From Neoconidiobolus thromboides FSU 785 (lineage: Eukaryota; Fungi; Entomophthoromycota), in contig MU626385.1 of the NCBI GenBank assembly GCA_025603075.1, positions 1-59,872 of the forward strand: a stretch of DNA of 59,872 nucleotides, given 5' to 3'. Positions within the stretch are counted from its first letter, which is position 1; each line of letters opens with the position of its first letter. Made by a program: the position numbers and the translations under genes. The notes under the pieces were generated by a model. That model was not told the DNA's origin and did no database searches. It saw only the letters and a list, made by a program, of their open reading frames with translations. This document shows positions 30,974-57,674 of this stretch, in pieces.

Positions 30974-31498
30974 ATGAAATATCAATCAATTTTAGCCTTT
31001 TTGATTGCATCTATCGCTTCAGCAGCTGTATCAAGCAACCATTGTGATTCAGTAGATCCTTCCATTAAAGATCTTTGTAAAAAAGTACTTGAAGCAAGCA
31101 CTGAAATCGAAAAAGAAGTAACCACTTGTGAATCAAAGTGTAGTGATGACAACTGTAAAACAAAATGTGTTACTGACGCCTTACCACCAGCTCTTGCTTC
31201 CGAACAAACTCAAGGAAAGATTAAATGCATTTCTGATTGTAAAGATGATACTGCTTGCTTATCTAAATGCATCGATGGAAAAGTTTCAAAAGAGGATCTC
31301 GATAAAACTGTAAAATGCACCAAAGATTGTAAAGATGATGTCTCTTGTAGTCTCAAATGCTACCAAGATGTTTTGAAATCTGTCAGTACCAATACTAATA
31401 GTAACACTGTCAAGTCAACTTCACAAACCTCTTCTGCATTTTTCTCATCTAATTCTCCTTTAGTTGCAATTGCAGCAGCATCATTACTCCTCGTTTAA
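30974..31498 (+). CDS. Cys-rich secreted, probably GPI-anchored protein (paralog A, 14 Cys)
   Basis: Signal peptide, three C-x3-C-x4/5-C-x3-C modules, Ser/Thr stalk, hydrophobic C-terminus SPLVAIAAASLLLV. Confidence 0.85.
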   Translation: MKYQSILAFLIASIASAAVSSNHCDSVDPSIKDLCKKVLEASTEIEKEVTTCESKCSDDNCKTKCVTDALPPALASEQTQGKIKCISDCKDDTACLSKCIDGKVSKEDLDKTVKCTKDCKDDVSCSLKCYQDVLKSVSTNTNSNTVKSTSQTSSAFFSSNSPLVAIAAASLLLV

Positions 31499-31581
31499 GT
31501 TTATTTTCTAGATTGCTTTAAGTTGGTATTAATGTAATATAATAAATAAGGTTCTGTTTATTAGAAAATCGTTTTTATTAT

Positions 31582-31674
31582 GGAGATGTATTTTTTTGTT
31601 TAGGAATTTACTAACAATCTTTCTACTCAAGTAATGCTTAAAAAATGGAAAAGTAATGAAACCGAAACACCCCC
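31582..31674 (+). mobile_element. MITE copy 9
   Basis: GGAGATGTATTTTTTTG...AAACACCCCC; TSD TTAT/TTAT. Confidence 0.9.
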
Positions 31675-31743
31675 TTATGGTTTTTGGCTTTCAAAGGAAT
31701 TCTAAGAGCATTCGCAGTAAAATTGCAGTAATAATGATAAACT

Positions 31744-31837
31744 AGGGATGTATTTTTTTGTTTAAGAATTTTACTACAATCTTTCCACTCAAATAGCGCC
31801 TGAAAATGGAAAAGTAATGAAATCAAAAAAATAGCCC
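31744..31837 (+). mobile_element. MITE copy 10
   Basis: Family core nearly intact; flanks AACT/AATT. Confidence 0.88.
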
Positions 31838-32087
31838 AATTGAGATACCTTTTTAATAGAGTAATCACCTCTAAAGCCCTGACTTTATTAAAAAGATGTA
31901 TTGCTACAGAAGTATGTACCAATACCAATAGATAGACATATATCAAATAGCTCTTCTAACCGAAATTAAATATTTAAATAAAATAAAATTACAGCTTGGT
32001 TTATTATAAAAATAATTTGTTAGACTCCTTTACCCTACTAATAAATCATATTAAGAAAATAATAAAAACATCTTAATTTAAATGTAT

Positions 32088-32181
32088 GGGAGAATGTCTT
32101 TTCTAGTTTTAGTATCCTATTCATTTTTTATTTACTAAGAAATCTACAAAATTATTAAATATACTAAAAAAAGACATATTC
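32088..32181 (-). mobile_element. Heavily degraded MITE-like copy abutting copy 11
   Basis: Inverted ends ATGTCTTTTCTAGT / ACTAAAAAAAGACAT; internal TTCATTTTTTA and AAAATTATTAAA resemble the family's reverse strand. Confidence 0.5.
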
Positions 32182-32185
32182 ATAT

Positions 32186-32283
32186 GGGGATGTATTTTTT
32201 TGTTTAAGAATTTTACTAATAATCTTTCTACTCAAATAGCGCTTAAAAAGTAGAAAAGTAATGAAACCAAAAAAAACACTCCC
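32186..32283 (+). mobile_element. MITE copy 11 (close to consensus)
   Basis: GGGGATGTATTTTTTTG...CCAAAAAAAACACTCCC; TSD ATAT/ATAT. Confidence 0.92.
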
Positions 32284-32700
32284 ATATCTATTATCTATTA
32301 TCCCTTTAATTACAAGTTAAGACACAAGGCTTCCTATATGTTGTGTTCAACTCTTTTCAGTTTTTAGATGGTGAAGGCAAATGACCACAACAATAAATAT
32401 TACTCTTTGTAAAGTGACTAATGATTTAAAGAAAACTATATTCGAATCGAGATATTAATGAAGATGGATATGGCTGTTGAGTTGAAATGTACACTATCCA
32501 ACTTTTCCTTTAAAAATAAAGGTTTATATCGTAGGCTATAGCCATAGTGATAACTCAATTTGTCATTAATAAAAATAGTTAGAGTTATTTCTCTTACAAA
32601 TTACAATCCTCATTTTAAGCGACAAAAAATCGCGAAATTGCAGTTTTATTCTAATGAGTAATATCTCTTTTCTTTTCTGCAAAAACTAAGTACAACATAT

Positions 32701-32799
32701 GGGGCTGTTTTTTTTGGTTTCATTACTTTGTCCATTTTTTAAGCACTATTTGAGCGGAAAAATTGTTAGTAAAATTATTAAGCAAAAAAATGCATCCCC
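32701..32799 (-). mobile_element. MITE copy 12
   Basis: GGGGCTGTTTTTTTTGG...AAAAATGCATCCCC; TSD ATAT/ATAT. Confidence 0.92.
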
Positions 32800-32819
32800 A
32801 TATGGGAAAGCGTTATATA

Positions 32820-32906
32820 GGGAGTTTTTTTGATTTCACTTTTTCCATTTTTTAAATGCTATTTGAATGGAAAGGTTAGTAAAATTCTTAAACAAAATAC
32901 ATTCTC
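32820..32906 (-). mobile_element. MITE copy 13
   Basis: Reverse family core with small deletions, 20 bp from copy 12. Confidence 0.82.
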
Positions 32907-33111
32907 ATATTGTATATTTTCAAAATTAAAATTCATTAATTTTAGTTTAATTTATGACTAAATACAAAATATAAATTACATGTTTCATAGTTAATTTTGA
33001 ATTCTATTTTCAATATTTCTATAACAATATAGATTCTACATTAATCAATTTAATATTAAAAGCTTAAGCCTTCGTTTTAATAATATTTATCAAAAACATT
33101 ATTTTAAATAT

Positions 33112-33210
33112 GGGGATGTATTTTTTTATGTAAGAGTTTTATTAGTAATTATTCTACTTAAATAGTGTTTGAAAAGGGGAAAAAGTGATGAAACTAAAAA
33201 AAGCATCGCC
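33112..33210 (+). mobile_element. MITE copy 14
   Basis: GGGGATGTATTTTTTT...AAAAAGCATCGCC; TSD ATAT/ATAT. Confidence 0.88.
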
Positions 33211-33363
33211 ATATAGTAATATTATATTTCAAGAAAACTAAATATTAATTTATATACTAGTTACAGTTTCTTCTCACTATTCAGAGCTGTCTAGTTCCAT
33301 CCTATAAGCTATATACTTAAATGGCAAAGGAGATAAAAACAATTGGCCACATATTATAGATAA

Positions 33364-33460
33364 GGAGATGTGTTTTTTTGTTTAAGAATTTTACTACAAT
33401 CTTTCCACTCAAATAGCGCTTAAAAAATGGAAAAATAATGAAATCAAAAGAAACACTCCC
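33364..33460 (+). mobile_element. MITE copy 15
   Basis: GGAGATGTGTTTTTTTG...AAACACTCCC; TSD ATAA/ATAA. Confidence 0.92.
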
Positions 33461-33566
33461 ATAATATTATATTAAGATATTCAACTTGTAATATCAGATG
33501 TTCAAATATAAATACAAAAGATTGAACGATTTTAGTATATAATAAAGTACTTTAATGGCTTAAAGA

Positions 33567-34175
33567 TTAATTAAATAATAGAGCTCCAGCAGTTAAAAGA
33601 ACTAATGGGGAGGCGGTATTAATAAATGAATTAGAACCAGCCTTTGGTTTTGAAGGATCACCTGAAGTAGGTAACTTACTGCTATCTTCCGAACTTCCAG
33701 ATGTAGATGTTTTGCCACTATCACTTGAGTTTCCAGATTTTACAGTAGTATCTTTGGTTGTTTGCCCTGAAGTTCCCAATGAACACTTAGAAAGGCAACT
33801 TATATCGTTATTACAACCTTTAGAACATTCAAGACTTTTATCAAGATCTTCCTTTTGGACCATACCACCTGAGCATTTTGAAATACAAGCGGTATCACCC
33901 TGCTTACATGAATTATAGCACTTGCTTTGTTCTTGGATACTTGGGGAGTCCATTAAATCAGAGACAGCGTCTGTCGAACATTTTACCTTACAGTCCATAT
34001 TAGAGCATTTAGATTCACACGCTTTAATTTTGTTCATATATTCATTTCCAGCAGCAGCCTGTTTTTCGCAAGCATCTTTAGCACTGCCACTAAATGAATC
34101 ACAAAACCCTCCACTTGAAACTGCTGCAGAGGTAATAGCTGATATAAAGATAGCAATAATTGAGATATTTTTCAT
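33567..34175 (-). CDS. Cys-rich secreted, probably GPI-anchored protein (paralog B, 14 Cys)
   Basis: MKNISIIAIFISAITSAAVSS; CESKC..C..KC x3 modules; shares KEDLDK with paralog A; Ser/Gly/Thr stalk; SPLVLLTAGALLFN. Confidence 0.85.
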   Translation of the reverse strand: MKNISIIAIFISAITSAAVSSGGFCDSFSGSAKDACEKQAAAGNEYMNKIKACESKCSNMDCKVKCSTDAVSDLMDSPSIQEQSKCYNSCKQGDTACISKCSGGMVQKEDLDKSLECSKGCNNDISCLSKCSLGTSGQTTKDTTVKSGNSSDSGKTSTSGSSEDSSKLPTSGDPSKPKAGSNSFINTASPLVLLTAGALLFN

Positions 34176-34206
34176 TTTTTAGATTTAATTTTTGAAAAAT
34201 TAAAGT

Positions 34207-34218
34207 ATTTATACTTTT
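34207..34218 (-). promoter_or_regulatory. Extended TATA-like motif AAAAGTATAAAT
   Basis: 31 bp upstream of ATG 34175 on the minus strand. Confidence 0.4.
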
Positions 34219-35304
34219 TATCAACATGATCCTTATTTTAATTAAAAAAATTAATATTCATAAGATATTTATATGTTAGATGCAGTTTAAGTATAATTCA
34301 TGTACAATTTATTGATATTTGTTGAAGTTTAATATTTTATTAACCATTTTAATAAATATAACATTTCTTTATTTAGATTTTGGATATGATTGTTAAAGCT
34401 TGTTTGCGAAATATTTAAAGATAAATTTATGACACAACTTTCGCTAATGTTTAAATACTAGGCTTTAAAAAAGCAAGCAAACAAATAGTAGCCGAATAAA
34501 TTTTACTAGAGGTTGCATATTTAAACTTTAACAGAGGAAGAATTCCTGATCAAACTTTGCATATTAAATTCTGTTAAAACCCCTAAACGCCCCATCTTTA
34601 TTTTACCTCAAATTGTATAACCTTAATAAGTTTTCCTTTTTTAAATAAATAAAAAACAATAAAGCCGAGATCCTTATTTATACTAAAGTTTAATCCCCTC
34701 TAGTTTAAAAAATAGCTGTGATGTTGATTAAAGTAGTACTGTTTGTTTATATGTATGATTGATTTAATAAGATTCAAAAGTTTATATAAAGGTGTGCGTA
34801 ATGATAATAACAAGTAAATGTTGTTTATAATATCAATGTTTAATGGTATTGTTGGGTATTACTGACAACAAGTTATGAACATATCATAAATTAACTTTAT
34901 TTTTAATTAATTTATTGCATAAAACTAAATATAAAAAATGCGATAGCCCAAACTAATAGGCCTCGCTTTTAACTAAATAAGTAAATAGCTATTAATCCAT
35001 CAATACCAATAATTACTACTACAGCTTTGGCATAAATGTGATATTAATTTAATTTGACATATCAAAATATCATATAACTTTCAAATTCAAATAAATATTT
35101 TAATATAGATAAGTAAATGTTCTCAAAAATTAATATCTTTAAATACCCATTTCTAAAAAATATATATTATGCCTCAAATATTGTACTGTATTTTAATGCA
35201 TCAAATGTTATTTAGCTATTCGATTATTATAATATAACAAATTACCGACGCCTCCAATACAGTAGTTATTTTAAGTTTTGGCTTTAATAGAATTTTTACA
35301 ATAT

Positions 35305-35388
35305 GAGATGTATTTTAAAAATTTTATTAGCAATTTTTCTAGTCAGATAGCATTTTAAAAATGAAGTGGTGAAACCAAAAAAACACTC
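35305..35388 (+). mobile_element. MITE copy 16 (degenerate)
   Basis: GAGATGTATTTT..AATTTTATTAGCAATTTTT..GAAACCAAAAAAACACTC. Confidence 0.72.
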
Positions 35389-35892
35389 ATACATACTCTA
35401 AAATACAAAGTCCCAAAATATATAATGATCCGAAATATATTAGTTTAGCAAAGGTCAATTCATAATAAATCCTATTTGATTTTTTCGTATTACGTAAGAA
35501 TGACATTATTTTTTGTATTATGTCTATATAACATAGTATTTTGGCTTTGTTATTATAATAAATATTTGCTCATTTTTATTGACTTCATACACTATTAAAA
35601 TAGCATATTGGAAAAGTCAATTTGCAACTCAAAAACAGCTTAATATCTTAAAAATTATTAAAAATGTAATTCTATATCTTAAAAATTAATTGTATGGTAT
35701 ATTGATTGTTTATCTAAAGATTATGTATTTCTTATTTAATAATAACAGGATTTTTTTTGTTTTAAGCCATTTTTATATATTTAATATATTACAAAAAAGT
35801 GGTCTTTTCAAAAACATTAACATGATATTTGATAAACATATTATATTAAGAGTCAAAGATAACATCTGAAATATCTTTGAATATTAATATAT

Positions 35893-35989
35893 GAGAGCAT
35901 TTTTTTGACTTCATTATTTTTTCCATTTTTTAAACACTATTTAAGTAAAAAAAAGTTAGTAAAATCCTTAAACATGAAAATACATCCCC
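35893..35989 (-). mobile_element. MITE copy 17
   Basis: Reverse family core ending AAAATACATCCCC; flanks ATAT/ATAG. Confidence 0.88.
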
Positions 35990-36198
35990 ATAGATTGATT
36001 GCTCTAAGATTAAAAACTAATATCAGCTTTTTATCATTTTATCATGATAGAGATAACAGATAAAAAATAAGAATGATAATTACTTTATTTTTTAATCTAG
36101 CGTTTTATTAAATCAATTTTAAGAATATCGTTATTGACTATAAAAAATTGAAAGAATTGAATCAAAAAGCACTCTGGTTGGATTTATAATTTCAATAT

Positions 36199-36291
36199 GG
36201 GGATGTATTTTTTTAATAATTTTACTAACAGTCTTTCTACTAAAATAGCACTCAAAAATGGGAGAAGTGATGAAAGTAAAAAATATATACC
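36199..36291 (+). mobile_element. MITE copy 18
   Basis: GGGGATGTATTTTTTT left TIR and family core; right end decayed. Confidence 0.82.
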
Positions 36292-36849
36292 TATAAACTG
36301 AATTAAAAATTTATATTAAACTTTCTAAACTTATAACTGCAAATATTGTGGTGCTTTTGGCTACTAATTTAACTTATACTTCGTTCATTTTTTAAGCTTT
36401 AAAAAGAAAGGCAGCCAAAAAAAGGACATCTATATTTTGTTATTATTTATAGCTTTTTTAAAATACAATACTAAAAGGATTAGGGTTTTTAGAGGAACCA
36501 AATTAACTAACTCTATAAGAAAATAAAAAAATCAATAAGTAGCTTTAAAAATAAACCTTCAAAATTAGTATGTGTAAACATCTTTTTAACCATTTTCTCA
36601 TTTTTCAATCATAAAGTTAAAAATACCAGCTGAATTCATAGAGCAGACATTATCCTAAAATTTTATAATTATTATGTATGTCCAAAATTTATTTTATATA
36701 TTTATATGGATAAATAAATTAGCATACTATAATGACAAGTAGATACATTTAAAAGTTTGCTTTGACTCAATTGTAACATAATAGTCATATGTTAAATGGT
36801 GAAATAAAAGGAAATATAACTATTGTATTTAAAAAGGAATTTAATATTT

Positions 36850-36946
36850 GGTAATGTTTTTTTGATTTCATTATTTTTCCATTTTTTAAGCACTACTTGA
36901 GTGAAAAGTTTGTTGGTGAAATTCTTAAACAAAAAAATATATCCAC
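36850..36946 (-). mobile_element. MITE copy 19 (102 bp upstream of NOC2 ATG)
   Basis: Reverse family core; TSD ATTT/ATTT. Confidence 0.86.
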
Positions 36947-37048
36947 ATTTTTTATTTCAATTAGATAAATTTGTTTATTCTTTAGCGAATCATTTTACTT
37001 CTCTATTTTATAAATATCAAAATATTGAATTAAACTATTGTTTTTAAG

Positions 37049-39874
37049 ATGGGTAAAGCTAAGAAATCTACTAAAAAGTTCAATAAGTCCAATCTCCAGA
37101 CTGAGCTCAAAAATAGAAGAAAATTTAAGCAGATAAAAGCTAAAACAGGGAAAAACAAGTCTAGTTCATCTACTGCTGAAAAAACTGTGAAAAGTAACTA
37201 ATTAAAACTTACTAAAACTTTGATTAATGTTAAACTAAACTAGGTAAAGATAAGGAAAGTTTAGGTTATTTAAAGGTTTCCGGAAAAGACTCGTAATATT
37301 TTAGAATATCAAATTGATAATTACTAACTAAAATAAATAGCACTACTACTACAGGTGATATTTTTGAACAATTAGAGGAAGCCGAAGTAATATACATACT
37401 GTTTGCAATATAATTTAATTAATGTTATAGGATTTCGATATATCTGACTCAGAAGGGAATGAAGGTAACTTTATATCATAAATTAAATTTTGATTCTCAT
37501 TTCAAAAATAGATTCTGAAGAAGATATACCTGATCAAAACCTTGAAGATATAGAAGGGGAAGATATGGAAGAAGATGCAGAGCAGGAACATATAGAGGAA
37601 GACATAACAGATGATATAGAAGAAGATATAGAAGAAGGTGATATAGAAGAAGAAGAAGAAGAATACATTAAAGAGATGGAAAAACTTAAGGAAAAAGACC
37701 CCGAGTTCTATAAATATATCGAAGAAAACGATAAAGCTGTTTTAGATTTTGGGGAAGGGGGTGATAAAGATGAAGTAGAAAACGCTGAAGCAGATGAAAT
37801 GAATGTAAGAGTAAACTATTATTATTAAACAATATATCTAACTTTTTAAAGGGAACCTTTGATATTGGTTCAACTGTTTTAACAGTAAAACAAATCACTT
37901 CTTGGGAACAACACCTTATTAAAGTAATCTTTTTTATTTCAGATATCTATGGGAATTAACTGTTTTAGTCAAAATCCCTAAATACTGCTAAGGAGCTTAT
38001 ATTAGCTTTTAGGGATGGTACTCATATCAATGACAAAAATGAGGAGGCCGGCCTTATAGCTAAGTATAGCTTCAATAGCGATAAAGGTATTTTGTTTAAG
38101 TTTATCATATTTTAACTAAATATCGTAGTATTTAATAAAGTTATGGTTGCAGCTATGAGGTCACTTCCAGGTTTTTTTAATCATCATTTAAAAACTGGGA
38201 ATAATCCGTAAGTTTATTTAACTGATATTTACAAGGATCCAAACTAAACCTGTGTTAGTAAAACGCTCCCATCTCAATCAAAAAGTTGGAAAAAAATGCA
38301 AGCACTCGTTAAGACTTATTTAGAATCCATTGTCCATATGTTGTCTCAAATAACTGAGCCAGACATGATTAAGTTCATACTTGATCGTACTCAGGATTTA
38401 ATAAAATATATTGCCTGCTTCCCAAAGATATTGAAGAGTTTCTTAAAATTATGGCTCGAGTTCTTTGGATCATCTAATGAAAGTAGTGTCTATCTTTCAG
38501 CCTTTTCTTTAATTAGAAAAATTTCAATTGTATCCCCATTTGCACTTGATTTAAGTCTTAAAGTAAGTTTCTGTATAAGGTTTTTTTAAAATAGTTAATT
38601 TTGTCAGGGGGTATATTCTACTTACATTCGTGCTACAAAATCCATTAATAATTACAACTTTTTACGTCTGAATGTCTTAAAAAGTCTCAGTGTAGAATTA
38701 TTTGGTCATGATTTTGATAAAAGTTATCAATTAGCTTTTACTTCAATTCGTCAATTAGCTGTACATCTCCGTAACTCCATTAATAACAAGACTAAAGTAA
38801 TTATTTTGTATAGCTACCTATAAAATTAACTAACGATTTTAGGAATCTTACACATTGATTTATAATTGGCAATTCATTTCCTCAATATCTTTTTGGTCCA
38901 AAGTTTTATCTACTTACTGTAATAAAGATATAGAAGCCGAGCATGGTGAATCTCCGTTACGTCCATTAATTTATCCCTTAGCACAAGTTACTTTAGGTGT
39001 CATAAGGTAGTTATTGTCTATTATTTGGACTATTTTTTGACTTTTTGTAGATTAATACCTTCTCCAAAATATTTTCCATTACGTCTTAATTGTATCAAAG
39101 CCCTTCTAGCACTTACACATAAAACCACCGTATATATTCCTATCTCGCCTTACCTTATAGAAGTAAGATTTTTTTAATTAAAAATTGCAGTTTAATATAA
39201 TGTTTAGATGCTTGAATCTTCCGAATTCCAACGTCGTGCAAGTAATTCTACTCTTAAACCATTTAATCTCAATTTGGTTTTGAAAGCACCAAAGGAACAT
39301 TTAGGAACGAAAACCTATCAAGTAATTTTAAATGAAAATAATAATAATGATGTTAATAATAGTAGGATATGTTATCTGATGAAATACATGAATGTCTATT
39401 AGCCCATTTAGCCTCATTCTCCAATTCTATTGCTTTCCCAGAAATCACTCTTCCTTTAATACATTATGTAAGCTAGTAACATATTAATCAAAAAACAACT
39501 AATAGTTGGAATAGCTTAAAAGATTTAAAAAGGCCTCAAAAAATATGAAAATAAATAAACTTTTAGAGAATATTTTATTGAAGGTAAATTAGAATAGATT
39601 TTAAGGAATAGATCATAACTTTTTTAAAGATTGATGCCACCACAATAACAATTCAAAAACATCGTTCTCAGCTTGATTTCGCACCCTCTGATGTTGAGAA
39701 AATGGTAAACTTAATTCAAAACTTTATTATTATTTTGTAATTTCGTTATTTTAGAAAGCATTTGTTGACTCTGTATCTTCAGATGACACTCCTATTGGAC
39801 AGTACTATACTAAATACCTTGAGATGAAAGCTAAGAAAGAGGCCTTACTCAATGATGCTGAGGAATCAGATTAA
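37049..39874 (+). CDS. NOC2: Nucleolar complex protein 2 (60S biogenesis), many short exons
   Basis: [11 protein letters not shown], acidic tract, [81 protein letters not shown]. Confidence 0.93.
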
Positions 39875-40222
39875 ATTTTTAACAAGAGTTATCTGAATCC
39901 AAAACCTTAACTATAATCATTAGATAGCAGTTACTACGTTTACTTTTAAAATATTAATTGTTTGAGATAGAATATAGCTTTATAAAATAAAATGATAGAC
40001 TTTATTATCATTGCCTCTTTTGAATTAGAGCAGTTTGACATACATTTTAAATTATTTTTGGATATTATACAGAAAGTAAAATTTTGACTTTATTTAAATA
40101 GAATAAAATATCAACTTAATTTTGAATTTGATTTGCTTCAATACTTTAAATTATTTTTCGAAAATTTATAAAACTGTTTTCTAAAAGTAAAGGTGAACTA
40201 TAAATTGAATTAGTAGTAGAGG

Positions 40223-41567: not shown

Positions 41568-41848
41568 TTAATATAGAAGGATATAGAATTAGAAGTTATA
41601 ATATATTTATGCTTTATTTAAGCTCTACTTTTCTAAGTGTTTTTTAAAGCTGTAAATAAAAGTTTAAAAATATTAACAACTGTCAATAATCAAGTTTTTT
41701 AAATGAATCTTTATTTTTGAATCAAAAGAAAAAAACTAAAGTTGAACTATCCTTGATGCTAATGATTTTAAAATACCATGATTTTAACCCCTTTTCATTT
41801 TATTTATACTACAGTTCATAACATAAGTGAAAATAAATTAAATCATAT

Positions 41849-43086: not shown

Positions 43087-44754
43087 TTATTCTACTTTTG
43101 TTTTCTTCTTAATAAAGAATAAATTTAATAAATTTGAGATCGTTTTATAAAGAAGATAGGAGAATAGTGAAAATGAGAGTAGAATAGGTAAATAAATATC
43201 TAAAAGGTAACGCTGATAAAGGGATAAATTTTGTTGAGGTAATTGAAAGTGAGAGTCAATACAATTATTATTATTAATCCATTTAAATAAGCTATTGTTA
43301 CTTTGGCATATTATTTTTAAGTTTAATAATTGTTGTATATAATTTATCGCAGTATCTATACCATTTTCATTTTGTTTTGATAACAAGTTTGCTCTTTTTA
43401 ATGATAAATTGAAAGTATTATCCTTATCATTTATAATGGCCATTATGTTACTTGAATATTCGTTTAGTTCTGAGTTAAATGGATCCATATATATTCCAAT
43501 ACCCATTTCAACTGCTTTACGTGCATTCCTCGGTTGATCAACAGATAATGGTAATAATAACATAGGTTTACTATAATGAATAGACTCAAATAAAGACATT
43601 AAACCACCATGCGAAACAAATAGCTTAATCTGCTGTTGACTTAGTATTTCTTTTTGATTCAAATATTCAACTAATAAAAAGGCAGGGTGGTTTAATAAGT
43701 CAATAGTATCTTCTATTAAATCAGAATGAATATTTAATAAACTTAAATTATTTAATAAATATTTGTTTGCTATTATAACTCCATCTATTTCTCCCTTTTC
43801 TACTAAATTTAATAAACCTTTTAATAGTTTTTTGAACTCACTATTAGGAGGATAAAATATGGTACCAAAGCTAACATAAACAATCCTTTTTCTTAATTTT
43901 AAAAACTTTACTATTTTTTTATCCAAAGGTTGAACTTGCGTTGAAGTTCTTATAATTGGTCCTATCATTTTAACACTTTGATCTAAAGGTCTATTCACTT
44001 CTAAACCATGGAATGTATTAAACAATTTTAAGTGATTGAATGGGCCAAAAGGCACTCTTTTCTTATTAATGTTATTTCTCTGTCTAATCTTATCTAGCTT
44101 GATTATGTACTTACTTAAATAAACTAACTTTGATATCTTATTAATAAAAGTATAATAAATTCTTTCATAATAGCCTAACTCATATAACTGAGTAGGCGTA
44201 TAATGAAATTGGGAAGGTGAAATATAAGGGGAATTTAAAAATGGGAAAGATAAGTCAACTGTTTGAAAACCGTGTATAATTGGTAAGTTCAAACTTTCTG
44301 CTGCATCCAAGCATGCAGTAGACATAAAATCACATATTACAAGATCTGGTTTATGTTCTTTGAATAGTTTGAAATACGATTTTAAACTTAATTCATAGTT
44401 TGGTAGCAATAGATTGCCTAATATGTTTGAGTACATTTCAATCTCATTAGTTTTTGGCTCTTTTCTAGTTACTGCTTCACCCCAAATTTCAGACTCTCTT
44501 TTTAATACCCTATTCATATCCCTCTCAAGAACTAAATTAGTTACGTTATATCCCTTACTAAATTTTTGGTTATAGTCATGGCTAATATAATAAATGGTAT
44601 GATCATATTTTTGTTGTAAATCTTTACATATTTCAAAGAGATAATTGACGTGACTTGGAGTCCCGATCTCTAACCCAATCATTATTTTTTTGTTTGTCTC
44701 CTCTCCAAGAATATAACATAATAAACACAATATTAAAGTTTTTACTATTATCAT
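43087..44754 (-). CDS. UDP-glycosyltransferase family GT1, signal peptide plus C-terminal TM and Lys-rich tail, intronless
   Basis: GTPSHV catalytic-His motif, PDLVICDF, VYVSFGT, YLNQKEIL..IKLFVSHGGLMSLFESI..KPMLLLPLSVDQPRNA sugar-donor box, TM YLLDIYLPILLSFSLFSYLLY, ending KKKTKVE. Confidence 0.92.
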   Translation of the reverse strand: MIIVKTLILCLLCYILGEETNKKIMIGLEIGTPSHVNYLFEICKDLQQKYDHTIYYISHDYNQKFSKGYNVTNLVLERDMNRVLKRESEIWGEAVTRKEPKTNEIEMYSNILGNLLLPNYELSLKSYFKLFKEHKPDLVICDFMSTACLDAAESLNLPIIHGFQTVDLSFPFLNSPYISPSQFHYTPTQLYELGYYERIYYTFINKISKLVYLSKYIIKLDKIRQRNNINKKRVPFGPFNHLKLFNTFHGLEVNRPLDQSVKMIGPIIRTSTQVQPLDKKIVKFLKLRKRIVYVSFGTIFYPPNSEFKKLLKGLLNLVEKGEIDGVIIANKYLLNNLSLLNIHSDLIEDTIDLLNHPAFLLVEYLNQKEILSQQQIKLFVSHGGLMSLFESIHYSKPMLLLPLSVDQPRNARKAVEMGIGIYMDPFNSELNEYSSNIMAIINDKDNTFNLSLKRANLLSKQNENGIDTAINYIQQLLNLKIICQSNNSLFKWINNNNCIDSHFQLPQQNLSLYQRYLLDIYLPILLSFSLFSYLLYKTISNLLNLFFIKKKTKVE

Positions 44755-47311: not shown

Positions 47312-47416
47312 TAATCTCAGGGAGATAATTAAACAAATAAAACATGTAAATTATTATTAAATTTAATTCCATTTCAAATTTTAAGTTGAATAATTTTTTG
47401 ACTTTTTTGTTAAATA

Positions 47417-48055: not shown

Positions 48056-48615
48056 ATTGTATTAAATCGTAGATCATATATAAAAAGGCTGAGCTCGTGC
48101 AATAAAGAAGGTTTAAATTTATCTCTAAGCTATATTTACATAGAATTTATTTTACAATATAACCAAAGCAACTGAATTGAGTTATATAGCAGTGTATTAA
48201 TAGATTTTTACCAGAAGAAAGCCTTCTTTCCTTTTAACGTTTTGTTTGTTTTTAAGTTCAAAAGTTTAAAAACTTTCATTGAAATGTTGAAAAAGATAAA
48301 GCACTTTTGTTTTTTTGGTTTATTTATGTATATTTTGAATTATATTAAGAGTAACAGTTAATAAAAATAATTATGTATAGTATTACTGAGCTAGAGTTTC
48401 AATACCTAAAATAGCTCTTATAATTCATTATGTGATCATGCTTTGACGATTTTTAAATGATAACATTTAATAAGTTAAAATCAGTTTCTTAAAGCTATTT
48501 ATCCAAAAGAGTAACAAACAAATATTGAACTATATTAACACCTTTAATAAGAGTATAATTGATAAAGCAATAAATATAGAAATATAAAAGTAAAATTGAC
48601 AATAATTTATTTTTC

Positions 48616-50595: not shown

Positions 50596-51112
50596 TAGTT
50601 TTGATTATTTTAAGAAAATGATAAATTAAGATTTTTTTTGAATAATTTAGTATTACGTTTATGCAAAATGACTTGAGAAAATGCAAAGGATGGATTTGAG
50701 TAAATTTCAATTGCTTTATAATAAAAAATCAAAGTAATTATTTATAATAATGCTATATTTTTTATAATAAATTTTCTTAGTATTTTCATTAGTTTATCTA
50801 AAACTATACTACTAATTAAAGACTATACTACAGAAGTAATAAAGTATACAGCTATTTTTTTGAGCTTTGTTATTATTGACATTATTTGATTTTTTATAAA
50901 CCAAAGTCAATATAATAATATAATAGTGAAATAAATAAGAATGATTATGAAAACTTCATTAATCACATATTAAAATTTTTTATAAGTTTGAATGTAAGTT
51001 TAAAAAAAACATTTATCTTTTCGCATATTAGTAAAAATATAAGATATTAAAATTATATATATAAGCAATATCAAGTAAATACTGTGTTAGATATCATCAT
51101 TTGGCAAAATGT

Positions 51113-51207
51113 GAGAATGTATTTTTCTAAGAATTTTATCAACAGTTTTTCCATTCAAATAGCGCTTAAGAAACAGAAGAAGTAATAAAACCAAAAAAAA
51201 CATCTTC
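51113..51207 (+). mobile_element. MITE copy 22
   Basis: GAGAATGTATTTTT...CCAAAAAAAACATCTTC; TSD ATGT/ATGT. Confidence 0.86.
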
Positions 51208-53955
51208 ATGTATTTTATATGTTACAGTATAAAGGATCTTGACAAGAATTAGATTTAGATAAAATCAAAATGACACACAAATATCAACATAAAACATCAG
51301 CTGACATATTATTTTGAATATTCACTCTTGTATTAAATAAATATGAATTAAATTTTATGTGTATAATTTAAACAGAAGACGTAATAATACTTTGAAATTA
51401 TATTAAAATTTGTTTTTAAAATAAAATAAAAAAATAACATAAACTTTGATTTAAAAACGTAAATGATAGTACAAAGTAAAACAATAGCACCTTATATAAG
51501 GACAGTAGTCTTCTAAAAATCTTGAATGAGTTAGACTTTTAAACAGTTTATTGTTATAGATAATTAAAACAATGATAGTCTTTATATAAAAATCATAAAA
51601 GTAATCCTCAAAACATCTTTTGTATACATCAAAAACTAATCTAAACATAATTATCATTATTATTGCTAAGATTAATATTATAACAATGATTTTAATGATT
51701 TGTTTTAGAACTAATTCTTATTTAAATTGACCTTGATCTTAACATTCAATAGCTAAATCATTTTTCTATAGCAGATCATTTAATTATGATTTTAAAAAAA
51801 TTATATTCATACACTACTGAGATTGTATTGTATATCTAAAAAGTAACAAAAGTCAAAAAAGTCGTTATGATAAAGTCATTCCTAAAAAATTAACTCGGAG
51901 TATTCTTTATAAAACTTAAAACTTCAACTCACAATAACATTTTATCTAGTAATCATTCCTATTTATTTATAATTTGTAATTCCAAATTATTGTTATTCTA
52001 ACTTTGACCTTTTGAAATATTAACCAAATTAGGTTATTATTTTTGAACATAAACATTTTAAAACAAATTGAAATTTAGTTAAAAAAACATGGGTATTTTT
52101 TCAACCAAAGTTAATAATCTTAAACAGTGCACAACTTATCAAACTAGCTTTAAAAATAGTACTTTGTAAAAAGCTATTTATAGTTTTGTTTATATTTTAA
52201 ACTTTTAATATTTTTTAATACTATGAAATATTGGGATATTAGTTAAATAGAAGGATAATTATTAGTACAAACAGTAATGTGCTTTCAAACCTTAATATAA
52301 TTCCTATGCTTTAAAATTAAAAGTATTTTTCATTTTACTCATTTATTTCTCAAGAATAGCTGAAATCATACATAGTAAATTCTAAGGTAAAGTTGTAACT
52401 TATTGTCTTATTTTTAAACGTGTGTCATTGTTTTTTCTTTAATTTATTGTTTTAAGCTAAAAATAAAATTGAATTCTATATCTATATTTAGTATATTTGT
52501 ATTTATAGATTTCCTAATATTCCATGTAATTATGAATTTTAATATCAATAAACTATAAAAATTGTTAAAACGGGGATAAATGTATACTATATTGTAAATT
52601 GTATTCACATATTTGACTTTTAATAAGAAATAAAACTTCTAATAATAAACGAGTTGTATAAAGCATTTAATCCCACTATTCAAAAATACAATAAATAGAA
52701 TCATCTGTTGTTTCGAATTATAAATAAGACATATTATATGTCTAAAGTTAAGTCTTTATCTTACAAAATGATTTAATTCTTTATCAAATATTTATAAATT
52801 ACTAAAATTGTTAAAAAGTTTATTATTATTTGATTACTACATTAGTGAATATACTCTTACAATATATTAATTTAAGTCATTTAAAGGTGTTAAGGTGGAT
52901 AGTGGTCAGACTTATTATATGTGATAATATAATTTATCCTTGGCATTTATTTTTAAAAAATAACTAAAAAATGTTTAATTAATTAAATATTCTTAAATGA
53001 TATAAAAATAAAATAAAATAATAAATTAAAATCTAGATTTGATATAAAACACTTTATTTTTAATAATAAATGACGTCTAATGTAAATTAGAGGATCATAT
53101 TCTAAACTTATTTTAAATTTACACTTCCTCTTGAAAGCCCACCGTTTTTCATCACCCAATATCTCCAAATGTTTTTCAGGGGTAAATTCAAATAATAGCA
53201 AATCAAGCTAATATTATAGTTTAAGCCATAAAGATCTTAAAATTAATTCGAGTTAAAAATAGTTAATCATTTTGGAGTGGTGAGATCATTAAGCTCTTTC
53301 AACCATTTAATTAGAATAAATTGATTGATACAGAATTAGGTTGAAACTAAGTAAAGGCTTTAAATTAGGCGGCAGACTTTTAACTAAGTTGATTAATAAG
53401 CCATAAAACTTTATAGAATATCACTTACTTTTGGGCCAATTTTTAATAAATTTATTTTATGCACAATTATTAAACTAATCTTGAATTGATAATGAATTCT
53501 TATTCTTTATTTTACAAAGTATATATAATTAAACTAAATCCCTTCTCTTTCTTTATTTTATTTTTACGTTTTATTATTTCCTATCCTTTCAAGTAAAACC
53601 GGTGAGAGAATAAGTACCGTTAGTTCATAATTAAGTTTAAGGTCCTTTCAAATATTAATATTAATTTGGTTTGGCGTTGTTATTTTGTTAGGAGGTTCTA
53701 ATATTATTAAGTTGAATTTTTAACAACCATTTATTTTTTCTCCCCGAAACCTTAAATTAAACTTAATTGGTTGAGTGATTATTAACCCTACTTCACCTTA
53801 GACTATTAAAACTTTCCGTAATTGATAATTCTTTCGTATATAACAAGAATTTAATACGTTTAAACTTACGCCAACTCTTAAAATTCAAATTATAAAAGCA
53901 GCTAAAATTGCCCCTTTTTTAAATATATTTTTTTAATTATTTCAAAAATCTCAAT

Positions 53956-55086
53956 ATGCTTCAAGGCCAAAATGATACCAAGCTCAATGAAATGGAGAAA
54001 TTCAAAGTATTCTTAAAAATGCCAATAACCAAAGATTTTGTGGACATTCTAACATTAAAGACAAAGATTGTATTAGATTCAACTAGTTCAATTAAGCGTC
54101 CAATTACTCCTCCCTTGACGCCTTTATGTCCTGGAAATTCACCTTTACCAAAACTTTCTACATTTGTTCGTAACCTCATAATAAGATCAAGAGTTCAACC
54201 TGCTACATTATTTGGTACCATGGTATACTTGGAAAGGCTAAAAAGCAAATTTCAAAATATTATTGCTAAGCATGAGTGCGCTCCACATCGCATAATGTTA
54301 GCTGCATTAATAGTAGCTGGTAAATTTTTGAATGATTCTTCACCAAAAAATAAACATTGGGCTAATTACTCACAAATTTTCCACATATGTGACATCAACC
54401 TTATGGAAAAGCAAATGTTAGAGTATCTCCATTTCAATCTTATAGTTACTGAAGAAGAACTTATGAAACAATATAATAGTTTTTCTCATTTACCTCATAG
54501 TCCAAGGGAATTAGCTATTATCACCTCCATTCCATTCACACCTTCAACACCAAAATCAGGTATATTTCCACCTAGTCATAAAACTCCCTTTTCTATCCAT
54601 TTCCCAGAGATTTTAGATACAACCACAGGAAAGTATCATAAAAAAGAATTATTGACACCAATCGTATTAAGTAATATTAAGGAAGGATCAATTTTACCAA
54701 CACCTGATAGTAAAGGAAATAGAAAATACAATCCTTATCCTAAAGCAATTATTACAAAGTTAAACCATCCATCAAAAGGTTCAACACTCTATCAAAGACG
54801 TGCATCACGTAAAAAGTTAAGCAATGAGCTCACACAGCAAACTAGTTTTAAAACTAACCCAGAAATTATATTAACAGTTCCAAATACAAATATTAATAAC
54901 CCACCTCTCTCCGCACCTTTATTTAAGCAATTTCCATACCCCACTTATAGTTTAAAACAAACTACCCCTAATTATATGGCAACTGGACAAAATTGCCTTA
55001 CCTTGCCACCTTTAAGTTCAATTATGGAACAAAGCCTTTCATTAAATTTATCTTACTCTACTAACTTATTTCCTCGCTCTGGATAA
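53956..55086 (+). CDS. Pho85 cyclin, Pcl1/Pcl2-like, intronless
   Basis: LPKLSTFVRNLIIRSRVQPATL..YLERLK, HRIMLAALIVAGKFLNDSSPKNKHWA, DINLMEKQML; Ser/Thr-Pro-rich tail. Confidence 0.9.
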   Translation: MLQGQNDTKLNEMEKFKVFLKMPITKDFVDILTLKTKIVLDSTSSIKRPITPPLTPLCPGNSPLPKLSTFVRNLIIRSRVQPATLFGTMVYLERLKSKFQNIIAKHECAPHRIMLAALIVAGKFLNDSSPKNKHWANYSQIFHICDINLMEKQMLEYLHFNLIVTEEELMKQYNSFSHLPHSPRELAIITSIPFTPSTPKSGIFPPSHKTPFSIHFPEILDTTTGKYHKKELLTPIVLSNIKEGSILPTPDSKGNRKYNPYPKAIITKLNHPSKGSTLYQRRASRKKLSNELTQQTSFKTNPEIILTVPNTNINNPPLSAPLFKQFPYPTYSLKQTTPNYMATGQNCLTLPPLSSIMEQSLSLNLSYSTNLFPRSG

Positions 55087-56055
55087 AGCAATCAAAAGGT
55101 AGCACTTTGAAGCATTTTTGATCAATTTCGTTTGTATAAATTTAAAATATTAACCTCTTTTGCTCCTTTTCTTAAAATAAGCCGGTTTTAAATAAAATAA
55201 TTCATAGAATTAAAATAAATTTTAAATTAAGTTATATTGCGAATTGTAGTTAAATTTGTAACTGAAATAACCATCCTGTTTTAAACAAATATATTTAATA
55301 AATACTACTTTCAGGTAAACTGATTAGTTGAGTATAAATAATAGTTTAAACTAGAATATCAATAAATTAAAAAATATTGTTATATTGTTGTTAGACAATA
55401 CTAATATGAAAATTTCTTAGTTTAATTTTGTCCATTTATTAGGTAGCTTAAAATTTAAAAAATAACCTGATAGAATAATGATATCATTAATTTTCAAAAG
55501 CTAATAAATTAAGGTGAAATAAAGGCGAAGCATAAATAAGCTCTTTAATTTTAGAATCAATTTAACTTTGGAATTAAGATACAATAATCATGTAGTAAAA
55601 ATAAAAGATCCATGTTATTGAAATAAGATTTAAGAGCTATGAATAGATCAATAAAAGTGGTAAAAAATAACCTTTTTTATAATTTAATGATTCAAATGCA
55701 CTATATACCATATTAAGCTCTATAAATACTATATGTTTTTAATATAGCACTTCATACCACTTCTCCCTCATTAAATATTTGATGATAATCTTTTAAACGT
55801 ACATTTTCTTACACGTTTTGTATGCGTTAAAATTTAAAAGTAAAATAGTAATTGTACACATTGAATTGTTTTAAAAAAATACTTGAAAAATTATAAATAC
55901 GATTAGATAATTTCGATTGTCTTTTGTGATACCAAAACATTAACTAAAATTGTATGAGATAAAAAAATATAGTTTAACTACAATTAAAAATTTTAATGAA
56001 CTATTGGGTGTATAATTTCATATAAATTTGTGATATTATTTTTACAAGAGTATAT

Positions 56056-56154
56056 GAGGATGTGTTTTTATGTTTAAGAATTTTGTAATAATTTTTCCGC
56101 TCAAATAGCGCTTAAAAGATAGAAAAAGCAATGAAGCCAAAAAAAAACACCTTC
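56056..56154 (+). mobile_element. MITE copy 23
   Basis: GAGGATGTGTTTTT...CCAAAAAAAAACACCTTC; flanks ATAT/ACAT. Confidence 0.88.
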
Positions 56155-56273
56155 ACATATTTAATATCACTAACATTAATAACACTATAGTGGCCAATAA
56201 TTTAAGTACTTTTAATTGGCTAATTATTGCTATGATGCAAACTAATATTGGGCGATATCAAATAAAATAAAAT

Positions 56274-56364
56274 CGATGTTTTTTTCCTTTATTACTTTTT
56301 CCGTTTTTTAGTGCTATTTGAGCGGAAAAATTATTAGCAAAATTCTTAAACATAAAAATACACT
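56274..56364 (-). mobile_element. MITE copy 24
   Basis: Reverse core GCTATTTGAGCGGAAAAATTATTAGCAAAATTCTTAAACATAAAAATACAC; ends decayed. Confidence 0.8.
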
Positions 56365-56801
56365 AAAAAGATTGCCCTAAATTTACCACTTATAGATAAT
56401 CGATTTTTAATAATCCCATAAGGAAAATATTTAGTAAAAATTTGTTTCATTAAAAAAAACTAAAAACATATATATTAACTGGATTAGGTTGCACTAATCT
56501 ATAACTACTGCTTATGGTAGAGTTGATCTCAAGAAGGGTAATATTGGTATTTATAGAGTTTATAAACGGTGATTTATCAGTCTTAAGGAGCATGGTGTAG
56601 GCATGGTTGTTATAACGTAAGTTTAAATAACCAGGTCTTTAATGAGATAGGTACTGCATGAGGCTGGCAACAGAGCAATGAAAACTATCCGCACTTTAGC
56701 AGTCTTGAGATAGCTGATTTAGAGCTTTGAGTGTTATGAATCATATGAACTTTACGTTATTCAACCTGAGATTTTTATCTTTTTTTTATTATACACATAA
56801 A

Positions 56802-56900
56802 GGGGGGAATGTTTTTGACTTCATTACTTTTTCCATTTTTTAAGCGCTATTTAAGCGGAAATTTTGTTAGTAAAATCCTTAAATACAAAAGTACACCTCC
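56802..56900 (-). mobile_element. MITE copy 25
   Basis: GGGGGGAATGTTTTTGAC...AAAAGTACACCTCC. Confidence 0.87.
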
Positions 56901-57143
56901 AATAAGATTTAATTTCTAATGTAAATAAAATAATTTAAAAAATATTATAGTAGATACTATAGTTAGATATTATTTTTTTGAATTACTATCATAAATACAT
57001 AATGAAAATGTTTCATCAATGGCTAGTATTAATATAGATTTATTCATTTATATAAAGTAAAATCTTATTATTATTTGAAATAATAAATACTTATCAATAA
57101 TCAACTTGATATTAGAAACTAATACTTTATTTAAAATAAATAA

Positions 57144-57674
57144 TTAGTTGCTAAGGAATAACAAACCAAAAGCAGCTAAAGCAAGAGGAGAATAACAGAA
57201 AGCTACAGCATTTGAAGAAGATTTTGAACTTGAAGTATCTTTTGAATCTTCTTTAACATTATCCATTCTAGCTTCATAAACCTTAGTACCACACATGAAC
57301 TTACAAGTTTCATCATTATTGCATTTTTTAGTACAGTTATAAGTCTCTTCAATTACTTTTTCAGAAACTGAAGTACATTCGACTGCTTTTTTATGATCCG
57401 ATTTACCTTCTTCAAGACATCTTTTGAGTAATGCAATTTCTTTTAAATCTAATTTTTGAAGAAAAATAGTTTTGACACAAGTTTGTTTACATACTTCATC
57501 TTTACATGAACTGGCACATTTAGCTATTTCGGCTAAAACGGGTTTGGATTTTTCTTCCCCTAATTTGGTACAGATACCCTTAAGTTCATTACCAACAATA
57601 TCACATGTTAGATCGGTGGTAGCAGCTAAAGTTAAAGTAGAAAATAAAAGAGTAGAGATAATGGTAAGTTTCAT
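57144..57674 (-). CDS. Cys-rich secreted, probably GPI-anchored protein (paralog C, 12 Cys in the domain)
   Basis: MKLTIISTLLFSTLTLA; CASSCKDEVCKQTC, CLEEGKSDHKKAVEC, CTKKCNNDETCKFMC; Ser-rich linker; SPLALAAFGLLFLSN. Confidence 0.85.
   Translation of the reverse strand: MKLTIISTLLFSTLTLAATTDLTCDIVGNELKGICTKLGEEKSKPVLAEIAKCASSCKDEVCKQTCVKTIFLQKLDLKEIALLKRCLEEGKSDHKKAVECTSVSEKVIEETYNCTKKCNNDETCKFMCGTKVYEARMDNVKEDSKDTSSSKSSSNAVAFCYSPLALAAFGLLFLSN

What the first reader, a model, noticed from the sequence alone, without database searches (positions are those of the whole stretch)
30974..57674. Family of GPI-anchored surface proteins built from triple alpha-hairpinin-like C-x3-C-xn-C-x3-C modules
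Seen: three intronless paralogs (30974+, 33567-, 57144-) share a signal peptide, an N-terminal C-x10-C pair, three C-x3-C-x(4-6)-C-x3-C modules, a Ser/Thr stalk and an SPL-hydrophobic tail. They are strongly diverged between the cysteines. Established: this Cys spacing defines plant alpha-hairpinin helix-loop-helix defence peptides; it is not CFEM, hydrophobin or LysM. Inference: an undescribed, rapidly diversifying fungal surface or effector family (adhesion, host-immunity evasion, protease inhibition or antimicrobial). This is the best candidate here for a new biological system.
Basis: partly seen in the sequence, partly recalled or inferred. Interest (0 to 1): 0.75.

Follow-up and report, generated by a model that had tools for sequence, protein, structure and literature searches.

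The report
Fungal surface proteins of disulfide-stapled helical hairpins
An insect-associated fungus carries a small family of genes, so far seen almost only in this species, for probable cell-surface proteins whose head is predicted to be three short helix pairs pinned by cysteine bridges; the shape recalls plant defence peptides, but common descent and function are unproven.

Summary
Three intact, intronless ORFs (30974-31498 +, 33567-34175 -, 57144-57674 -) encode 174-202 aa paralogs. Each has a signal-peptide-like start, a C-x10-C pair, C-x3-C-x(4-6)-C-x3-C modules, a polar linker and a hydrophobic C-terminus that fits a GPI signal. One caveat: paralog C keeps only the two outer cysteines of module 2.

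The genome is Neoconidiobolus thromboides FSU 785. It also holds a fourth paralog, a broken fifth copy, and a probable sister family of five two-module proteins.

No Pfam family matches, and no solved structure matches by sequence. A profile search of 1.84 billion proteins found only the four paralogs, one 93-aa fragment and four weak metagenome repeat proteins.

AlphaFold2 (pLDDT 72-74) predicts six helices forming three hairpins, with a turn at each module. The first hairpin superposes on the plant alpha-hairpinin BWI-2c, but no better than on generic hairpins.

Best reading: lineage-restricted GPI-anchored surface proteins built from alpha-hairpinin-like modules, analogous to the plant peptides rather than members of that family.

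"Rapidly diversifying" cannot be tested because dS is saturated. The heads are acidic to neutral and lack dibasic processing sites, which argues against free antimicrobial peptides.

The scan had not found this on other DNA; the only earlier notes are on this same window.

The parts
30974..31498 (+). Paralog A, 174 aa, intronless. Signal-peptide-like residues 1-18 (30974-31027). C-x10-C pair (31043-31078). Module 1 (31127-31168), module 2 (31226-31270), module 3 (31316-31360). Ser/Thr linker plus GPI-like tail and stop (31361-31498).
   Evidence: ORF. Cysteine spacing. Sub-feature translations checked. AlphaFold2 model of residues 19-136. GPI pattern match.
33567..34175 (-). Paralog B, 202 aa, intronless, convergent with A across a 2068-bp gap. 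Signal-peptide-like start (34119-34175). C-x10-C pair (34068-34103). Module 1 (33978-34019), module 2 with an x6 loop (33873-33920), module 3 (33783-33827). Linker of 59 residues plus GPI-like tail and stop (33567-33782).
   Evidence: 46% identical to A.
57144..57674 (-). Paralog C, 176 aa, intronless. Signal-peptide-like start (57621-57674). C-x10-C pair (57570-57605). Module 1 (57477-57518). Degenerate module 2 that keeps only the outer cysteines (57375-57419). Module 3 (57291-57335). Linker plus GPI-like tail and stop (57144-57290). The extra Cys160 lies inside the presumed cleaved GPI signal.

Best explanation
These genes encode a lineage-restricted family of small cell-surface proteins of Neoconidiobolus thromboides.

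Inferred pathway:
1. The N-terminal signal peptide directs the protein into the ER.
2. There, 14 cysteines (12 in paralogs C and D) form disulfides. One bridges the C-x10-C pair. Two staple each module (outer C1-C4, inner C2-C3).
3. This locks the roughly 118-residue head into three helix-turn-helix hairpins.
4. The C-terminal 20-25 residues act as a GPI-attachment signal: small omega-site residues, then a 7-residue spacer ending in S-P, then an 11-15 residue hydrophobic run.
5. That signal is swapped for a GPI anchor. The head is then displayed on a Ser/Thr-rich, probably O-glycosylated linker at the plasma membrane or cell wall.

I take the head to be a protease-resistant coat or binding module of the fungal surface, not a diffusible toxin or inhibitor. 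Each module is an analogue of the plant alpha-hairpinin and of other twin-CX3C hairpins.

Shown here: gene integrity, the paralogy, the cysteine pattern, the absence of known families and near-absence of relatives, and the predicted helical-hairpin topology.

Inferred only: signal-peptide cleavage, the GPI anchor, disulfide connectivity, glycosylation, and the coat or binding role.
For: Genes and family:
- Intact ORFs, with coding GC above flank GC.
- Four paralogs plus one decayed copy in the genome.
- Paralog D is annotated in NCBI as hypothetical protein K502DRAFT_367510 of N. thromboides FSU 785.
- Cysteine spacing is strictly conserved at only 20-46% identity.

Fold:
- AlphaFold2 on two different paralogs gives the same topology. 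A: pLDDT 72.3, helices 11-35/41-55, 59-70/75-81, 88-99/105-117. D: pLDDT 73.9, the same three hairpins. Each turn sits in a module loop.
- Hairpin 1 of D superposes on the alpha-hairpinin BWI-2c (2lqx) over 41 of 41 residues at 2.6 A, and on a 39-residue chain (F) of the walnut Jug r 2 entry at 2.3 A.

Disulfide topology:
- C and D lack exactly the two inner cysteines of module 2 and keep the outer two at unchanged spacing, x13. That fits a nested C1-C4 / C2-C3 arrangement.

Anchoring:
- All four C-termini fit a fungal GPI-signal pattern. Only these 3 of the 23 ORFs of >=100 aa in the window do.
- The hydrophobic run reaches, or comes within two residues of, the C-terminus, with no cytoplasmic tail.
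- The architecture recurs in five sister-family proteins of the same genome.
- About 10% of zygomycete secretomes are predicted to be GPI-anchored (PMC9391592).
Against: - No SignalP or NetGPI-type predictor could be run. The GPI pattern was recalled from memory.
- Model confidence is only moderate (pTM 0.47) from a 5-sequence alignment, and the packing between hairpins is unreliable.
- The paired cysteine loss is probably a single event. C and D also share a 2-residue deletion just after module 2.
- Paralog D has almost no Ser/Thr stalk (12% S+T).
- The coat or binding role rests on analogy with other fungal GPI proteins, not on any test.
Confidence: 0.55

Rival explanations
1. The proteins are shed or secreted effectors that act like plant alpha-hairpinins, as antimicrobial peptides or protease inhibitors. 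They would be released from the surface or processed into single hairpins during insect infection or microbial competition.
For: The motif and predicted fold match the alpha-hairpinin definition. BWI-2c, a trypsin inhibitor, is among the structural matches. The fungus belongs to Entomophthoromycotina, which includes insect pathogens. GPI proteins can be shed.
Against: The heads are acidic to neutral, pI 4.9-6.5; from my own knowledge, plant alpha-hairpinin antimicrobial peptides are cationic. I saw no KR or RR processing site between modules in the sequences. The loops are only 4-6 residues and closed by the presumed inner disulfide, which looks too tight for a canonical inhibitor loop (inference). 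All members carry a C-terminal anchor signal. The structural match is tied with generic hairpins.
Confidence: 0.12
2. The head is a ligand- or metal-binding surface receptor. It would resemble CFEM proteins (haem) or vanabins (metal held on a disulfide-rich helical scaffold), and serve nutrient scavenging rather than coating.
For: The overall architecture is the same as CFEM GPI proteins (my own knowledge). The sister family gives a sub-threshold Vanabin-2 hit, E 0.046 and 14.3 bits against a cut-off of 25. The weak metagenome matches are His-rich arrays of CHxxCGxDxxCHxxCP modules, which look metal-related. A conserved acidic residue sits in every module loop.
Against: No Pfam hit to CFEM or Vanabin for the family itself. 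There are almost no His residues or free Cys in the heads. The loop Asp can be explained as a helix N-cap (inference). No pocket can be judged from the model.
Confidence: 0.12
3. The C-terminal hydrophobic run is a true transmembrane anchor, or a retention signal, rather than a GPI signal. The proteins would then be type I membrane proteins.
For: Only heuristics support GPI. Paralog D has a 15-residue hydrophobic tail and no Ser/Thr stalk.
Against: No cytoplasmic residues follow the hydrophobic run. It is only 11-13 residues long in A-C, too short for a membrane span. Small omega-type residues lie 7-10 residues upstream in all members.
Confidence: 0.08
4. The ORFs are not functional genes: chance ORFs, or decaying remnants.
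For: One copy, on contig C12, is clearly decayed. No expression data were obtained.
Against: P(open frame) is about 2e-7 per ORF. All cysteines are conserved across paralogs whose synonymous sites are saturated, with dN/dS below 1. Signal and tail are intact in all four.
Confidence: 0.03

Closest known systems
Plant alpha-hairpinins (EcAMP1, the buckwheat trypsin inhibitor BWI-2c, and multi-module vicilin-type precursors)
   Same: The CX3C-Xn-CX3C motif (the definition allows n = 1-15; PMC7476358). A helix-loop-helix is predicted for every module. Nested C1-C4 / C2-C3 pairing is suggested by the paired loss. Several modules sit in one polypeptide, as in some plant precursors (my own knowledge). 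BWI-2c superposes on hairpin 1: Z 3.8, 2.6 A, 41 of 41 residues.
   Different: Fungal rather than plant. The loops are only 4-6 residues. The three modules stay together in a 118-residue head, with no visible processing sites. The head is acidic to neutral and tethered by a GPI-like signal. There is no detectable sequence similarity. The structural score is no better than for generic hairpins.
CFEM-domain GPI proteins of fungi (PF05730)
   Same: Signal peptide, then a small helical cysteine-rich head, then a Ser/Thr stalk, then a GPI signal (my own knowledge). CFEM clusters appear among low-scoring language-model neighbours, 0.76-0.82.
   Different: No CFEM hit even at E<=10. The cysteine count and spacing differ: 14 Cys in twin-CX3C modules, against the 8-Cys CFEM pattern.
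DUF7707 (PF24808), an uncharacterised fungal domain
   Same: Proteins of the same genome with a signal peptide, one C-x3-C-x5-C-x3-C module at the C-terminal end of the domain, a Ser/Thr stalk and a hydrophobic tail.
   Different: The family does not hit the Pfam model. hhalign aligns only one module, at 1.5-17% probability. The rest of DUF7707 has no counterpart here.
Two-module 8-Cys sister family in the same genome (contigs C29, C243, C59, C98, C3)
   Same: The same architecture. hhalign gives probability 75%, E 2.4e-5, over 51 columns that cover modules 2-3. None of 150 shuffles that kept the cysteine columns fixed reached that score.
   Different: Two hairpins instead of three. The second loop is long (8-24 residues). 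There is a conserved [LV]-P-[ND]-P linker and no N-terminal C-x10-C pair. It too has no Pfam family.
Twin-CX3C small Tim proteins and twin-CX9C CHCH proteins
   Same: A helix-loop-helix stapled by two nested disulfides between paired CXnC motifs (my own knowledge).
   Different: Those are proteins of the mitochondrial intermembrane space, single-module, with longer loops. Only a non-significant zf-Tim10_DDP hit was seen, and only for the sister family (E 0.65-7.7).

Membership tests
Plant alpha-hairpinins | Cysteine motif CX3C-X(1-15)-CX3C | tested here: met
   Three such motifs in A and B, with n = 4, 5 or 6. Two in C and D. Definition from PMC7476358.
Plant alpha-hairpinins | Helix-loop-helix fold | tested here: met
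   Prediction only. AlphaFold2 on A and D, pLDDT 72-74, puts a helix on each side of every module loop.
Plant alpha-hairpinins | Disulfides C1-C4 and C2-C3 | tested here: inconclusive
   C and D have lost exactly C2 and C3 of module 2 and kept C1 and C4. This is consistent, but probably a single event. No coordinates or chemistry were available.
Plant alpha-hairpinins | Sequence or structural relatedness to known members | tested here: not met
   A profile search of all PDB chain sequences found nothing at E<=10. BWI-2c reaches Z 3.8, tied with unrelated hairpins. It was absent from the top 50 for model A.
Plant alpha-hairpinins | Short free peptide of about 30-40 aa, usually basic, released from a precursor (my own knowledge) | tested here: not met
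   The modules are embedded in a 118-residue head. I saw no KR or RR sites in the sequences. pI is 4.9-6.5. A C-terminal anchor signal is present.
CFEM (PF05730), hydrophobins, LysM | Match to the Pfam model | tested here: not met
   hmmscan at E<=10 returns none of them for A, B or C.
DUF7707 (PF24808) | Match to the Pfam model over the 102-position domain | tested here: not met
   No hit at E<=10. hhalign against two DUF7707 proteins of the genome aligns 20-21 columns at probability 1.5-3.4%.
Fungal GPI-anchored proteins | N-terminal signal peptide | tested here: inconclusive
   Heuristic only. M-K, then 13-15 hydrophobic residues, then small residues before the first Cys. No SignalP was available.
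Fungal GPI-anchored proteins | C-terminal signal: small omega, omega+1 and omega+2 residues, a spacer, and a hydrophobic run to the C-terminus | tested here: met
   A-D all fit the fungal GPI pattern, which I recalled from memory. Only these 3 of 23 window ORFs of >=100 aa fit it. No dedicated predictor was run.
Fungal GPI-anchored proteins | Anchor actually attached, with cell-wall or membrane location | not testable with these tools
   Needs PI-PLC or HF-pyridine release, or mass spectrometry.

The most novel reading that the evidence does not exclude
The short-loop twin-CX3C hairpin (C-x3-C-x-x-D-x-x-C-x3-C) could be an unrecognised and widespread extracellular building block. It may link four things by common descent: this three-module family, the 8-Cys sister family with its apparent unnamed look-alikes in Ascomycota, the C-terminal part of DUF7707, and long secreted arrays in uncultured protists. 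If so, it would deserve its own domain family, and alpha-hairpinin-type modules would reach well beyond plants.
Probability: 0.25. Interest if true: 0.55.

Novelty: new variant of a known kind. Interest (0 to 1): 0.38.

Why it matters
Early-diverging, insect-associated fungi are poorly studied, and their surface proteins decide adhesion, immune recognition and resistance to proteases.

If this reading holds, fungi build surface heads from the same disulfide-stapled helical hairpin that plants use for defence peptides. This would add an unnamed domain type to the fungal GPI-protein repertoire. It would also give a compact, very stable scaffold for structural and display work.

It does not open a long-standing question. 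Orphan cysteine-rich surface proteins are common in fungi, and earlier first-reader notes list many other GPI-type cysteine modules in this genome.

Tried and rejected
- Pfam on A-C: only noise hits, E 0.24-4.
- Word-indexed protein search with A, and with the 5-sequence profile: only the family itself and P0008.
- Exhaustive profile search of 1.84 billion representatives: beyond the four paralogs, only P0008 (E 5.8e-4) and four His-rich repeat proteins from JGI/IMG, which I take to be metagenome-derived (E 3e-5 to 6e-4). These have no Pfam family. hhalign to one of them gives only 16%, so I treat them as module look-alikes, not proven kin.
- PDB by sequence: nothing.
- Foldseek against PDB: nothing at E<=0.001.
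- VIA-align wide on both models: best Z 5.5 and 5.0, all generic helical hairpins.
- ESM Atlas for A: best score 0.84, within the noise range. Its own model has pLDDT 0.54.
- DUF7707 lead from the Atlas: rejected as the family. Only one module aligns.
- dN/dS: uninformative, because dS is saturated.
So there is no context for P0008 and no transcript-assembly evidence.
- Word search with the C29 sister protein found nothing, not even itself, so that ORF may be unannotated.
- Literature searches found no description of such fungal proteins or of DUF7707.
- The genome-wide DNA pattern for the module is noisy: 341 hits against 148 in the reversed control. A narrower pattern gave 4 hits against 0 and led to the sister family.
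Full report
**Organism and setting.** The window is 26% GC. It is contig C128 of a 24.6-Mb, 799-contig assembly. I confirmed this: the fourth paralog is identical to NCBI KAI9292529.1, 'hypothetical protein K502DRAFT_367510 [Neoconidiobolus thromboides FSU 785]'. Other genes in the window are unrelated to the finding: a POT/PTR2 transporter, a UDP-glycosyltransferase, a cyclin and a DUF2009 exon.

**Observation.** They have 14, 14 and 13 cysteines at almost invariant spacing.
- A and B read C-x10-C, x16, then [C-x3-C-x4-C-x3-C], x19, [C-x3-C-x5/6-C-x3-C], x15, [C-x3-C-x5-C-x3-C].
- C has the same frame, but module 2 is C-x13-C: the two inner cysteines are gone and the overall length is unchanged.
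- The thirteenth cysteine of C lies inside the presumed cleaved C-terminal signal.

Identity is 46% for A-B and 26-29% for C against A or B, and the conserved columns are mostly the cysteines. An open frame of this length has a chance probability of about 2e-7 in this AT-rich DNA. The ORFs are 8-14 points richer in GC than their flanks. A and B are convergent, 2068 bp apart.

**More members.**
- A six-frame search of the genome adds paralog D on contig C184 (165 aa). It has the same cysteine frame and the same loss of the inner pair of module 2.
- The four-sequence profile adds a decayed copy on contig C12. This copy has an in-frame TAA in the loop of module 1, at L008:1609-1611. It also has a frameshift inside the loop of its last module, around L008:1720-1740, and only two modules. 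I describe it as broken and did not read it through.
- C and D share a two-residue deletion just after module 2. They are therefore probably sisters, and the paired cysteine loss is probably a single event.

**Relatives elsewhere.** Pfam gives only noise. The word-indexed search of 5.8 billion clusters found only the query. The exhaustive profile search of 1.84 billion representatives found three groups:
- The four paralogs, at E 1e-37 to 1e-42.
- One 93-aa protein from a Logan assembly, P0008, at E 5.8e-4. It has a signal peptide, the C-x10-C pair, module 1 and the start of module 2, and looks like a true but truncated relative.
- Four proteins of 325-559 aa held under JGI/IMG, which I take to be metagenome-derived, at E 3e-5 to 6e-4. 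They carry 6-11 modules of the form C-H-x2-C-G-x-D-x2-C-H-x2-C-P separated by His-rich spacers.

The four repeat proteins have no Pfam family. One of them aligns to the family across all three modules, but at only 16% hhalign probability, so I leave homology open.

A second word search that included P0008 added nothing. No solved structure matches by sequence. The family is therefore, on present data, almost confined to this species. One caveat: only predicted proteins were searched, and small ORFs are easily missed by annotators.

**Fold.** AlphaFold2 on the head of A, with a 5-sequence alignment, gives mean pLDDT 72.3 and pTM 0.47. It predicts six helices (11-35, 41-55, 59-70, 75-81, 88-99, 105-117), with turns at 36-40, 71-74 and 100-104, that is, in the loop of each module. 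The head of D gives the same topology at pLDDT 73.9, including at the module that lacks the inner cysteines.

Foldseek finds nothing significant in the PDB. VIA-align against 48,161 chains gives best Z 5.5 for A and 5.0 for D. All matches are generic helical hairpins, mostly on hairpin 1. Among the D matches are:
- the alpha-hairpinin trypsin inhibitor BWI-2c (2lqx): Z 3.8, 2.6 A, 41 of 41 residues;
- a 39-residue chain (F) of the walnut Jug r 2 entry (9q1l_F): Z 3.9, 2.3 A;
- the sea-anemone peptide acrorhagin I: Z 3.6.

All of these are tied with unrelated proteins. So the hairpin shape is compatible with alpha-hairpinins, but the searches cannot discriminate. The low pTM means the packing between hairpins should not be trusted.

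**Comparison with alpha-hairpinins.** The published definition is CX3CX1-15CX3C, a helix-loop-helix, and disulfides C1-C4 and C2-C3 (PMC7476358). The motif and the predicted fold are met. The connectivity is only suggested. The other properties differ:
- The loops are 4-6 residues.
- The three modules stay in one head, with no dibasic sites.
- The heads are acidic to neutral: pI 4.9-6.5, net charge -4 to 0.
- The proteins end in an anchor signal.

I therefore read the modules as working like alpha-hairpinin hairpins, without placing the proteins in that family.

**Anchor.** The proteins end in 11-15 hydrophobic residues at, or within two residues of, the C-terminus. In A-C this run is preceded by S-P-L. 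Clusters of S, N, G and A lie 7-10 residues upstream. All four fit a fungal GPI-signal pattern that I recalled from memory, and in the window only these 3 of 23 ORFs of >=100 aa fit it. Linker length and Ser+Thr content vary: 33 residues and 45% in A, 59 and 44% in B, 35 and 29% in C, 26 and 12% in D.

**A wider set in the same genome.** A narrow DNA pattern for C-K-x-D-x2-C-x3-C gave four hits against zero in the control. Two are modules of A, and one is a new ORF on contig C29. That ORF (193 aa) has a signal peptide, one short-loop module, one module with an 11-residue loop, a long Ser/Thr stalk and a hydrophobic tail. It has four paralogs, on C243, C59, C98 and C3. They share an 8-Cys domain with a [LV]-P-[ND]-P linker between the two hairpins.

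Profile-profile comparison with the finding's family gives 75% probability, E 2.4e-5, over 51 columns covering modules 2-3. I then shuffled the non-cysteine columns of the sister alignment while keeping its cysteine columns fixed. In 150 shuffles the score averaged 14.6 (maximum 29.9) against the real 31.6. The resemblance therefore goes beyond cysteine spacing, and I treat this as a probable sister family.

The sister family has no Pfam family either; its best hit is a sub-threshold Vanabin-2 match at E 0.046. The ESM Atlas places one member at 0.91-0.93, with 180 or more shared features, next to unnamed Ascomycota clusters of 167-203 aa. That is a lead that this sister family is widespread. 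The last of them, run with the C29 protein, returned nothing, not even the query.

DUF7707 (PF24808) proteins of the genome also carry one such module plus a stalk and tail. Only that single module aligns, at 1.5-17% probability.

**Evolutionary rate.** Nei-Gojobori estimates give pS 0.61-0.74 for every pair, which is saturated, and dN/dS 0.17-0.66. The duplicates are old. 'Rapid diversification' can be neither shown nor excluded without orthologs.

**Verdict.** This is a real, unannotated-by-family, lineage-restricted set of probable GPI-anchored surface proteins. The head is predicted to be three disulfide-stapled helical hairpins. It is a new variant of known themes (fungal cysteine-rich GPI proteins, and cystine-stabilised helical hairpins), not a new kind of system. 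Its function is untested, and I favour a stable surface coat or binding module.

**Limits.**
- No signal-peptide or GPI predictor was available.

Noticed in passing
G000:C29 (L013:1553-2131 -), C243 (L015:1159-1719 -), C59 (L016:1342-1839 -), C98 (L018:1363-1869 -), C3 (L017:1297-2139 -): Five intact ORFs form a probable sister family. Each has a signal peptide, an 8-Cys two-hairpin domain with a [LV]-P-[ND]-P linker, a Ser/Thr stalk and a hydrophobic tail. They have no Pfam family. The ESM Atlas suggests unnamed look-alikes in Ascomycota. The C29 ORF was not found in the protein collection and may be unannotated.
   Followed up: partly
G000:C12:146845-147332 (L008:1417-1904 +): A decayed two-module copy of the family. 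It has an in-frame TAA in the loop of module 1 (L008:1609-1611) and a frameshift in the loop of the last module (about L008:1720-1740). The signal peptide and hydrophobic tail are still recognisable.
   Followed up: partly
P0005, P0006, P0007, P0009 (JGI/IMG contigs of 1.2-2.1 kb, apparently metagenomic): Secreted-looking proteins of 325-559 aa from uncultured, probably eukaryotic organisms. They carry 6-11 tandem C-H-x2-C-G-x-D-x2-C-H-x2-C-P modules and His-rich spacers, and have no Pfam family. They may be an undescribed repeat with the same hairpin logic, perhaps metal-binding.
   Followed up: partly
G000:C25 (L010:1438-2022 +), C167 (L011:1149-1457 -), C26 (L009), C182 (L012): DUF7707 (PF24808) proteins of this genome end their domain with one C-x3-C-x5-C-x3-C module and also have a stalk plus hydrophobic tail. 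The C182 copy has an internal TAA.
   Followed up: partly
window 31499-33566: A and B are convergent and separated by 2068 bp of non-coding DNA. An earlier first-reader note calls this a MITE hot spot. I did not examine the repeats.
   Followed up: no
window 43087-44754 (-): An intronless 555-aa ORF with UDPGT / glycosyltransferase family 1 domains (Pfam E 3e-13). An earlier first-reader note calls it animal- or baculovirus-style. Not examined here.
   Followed up: no
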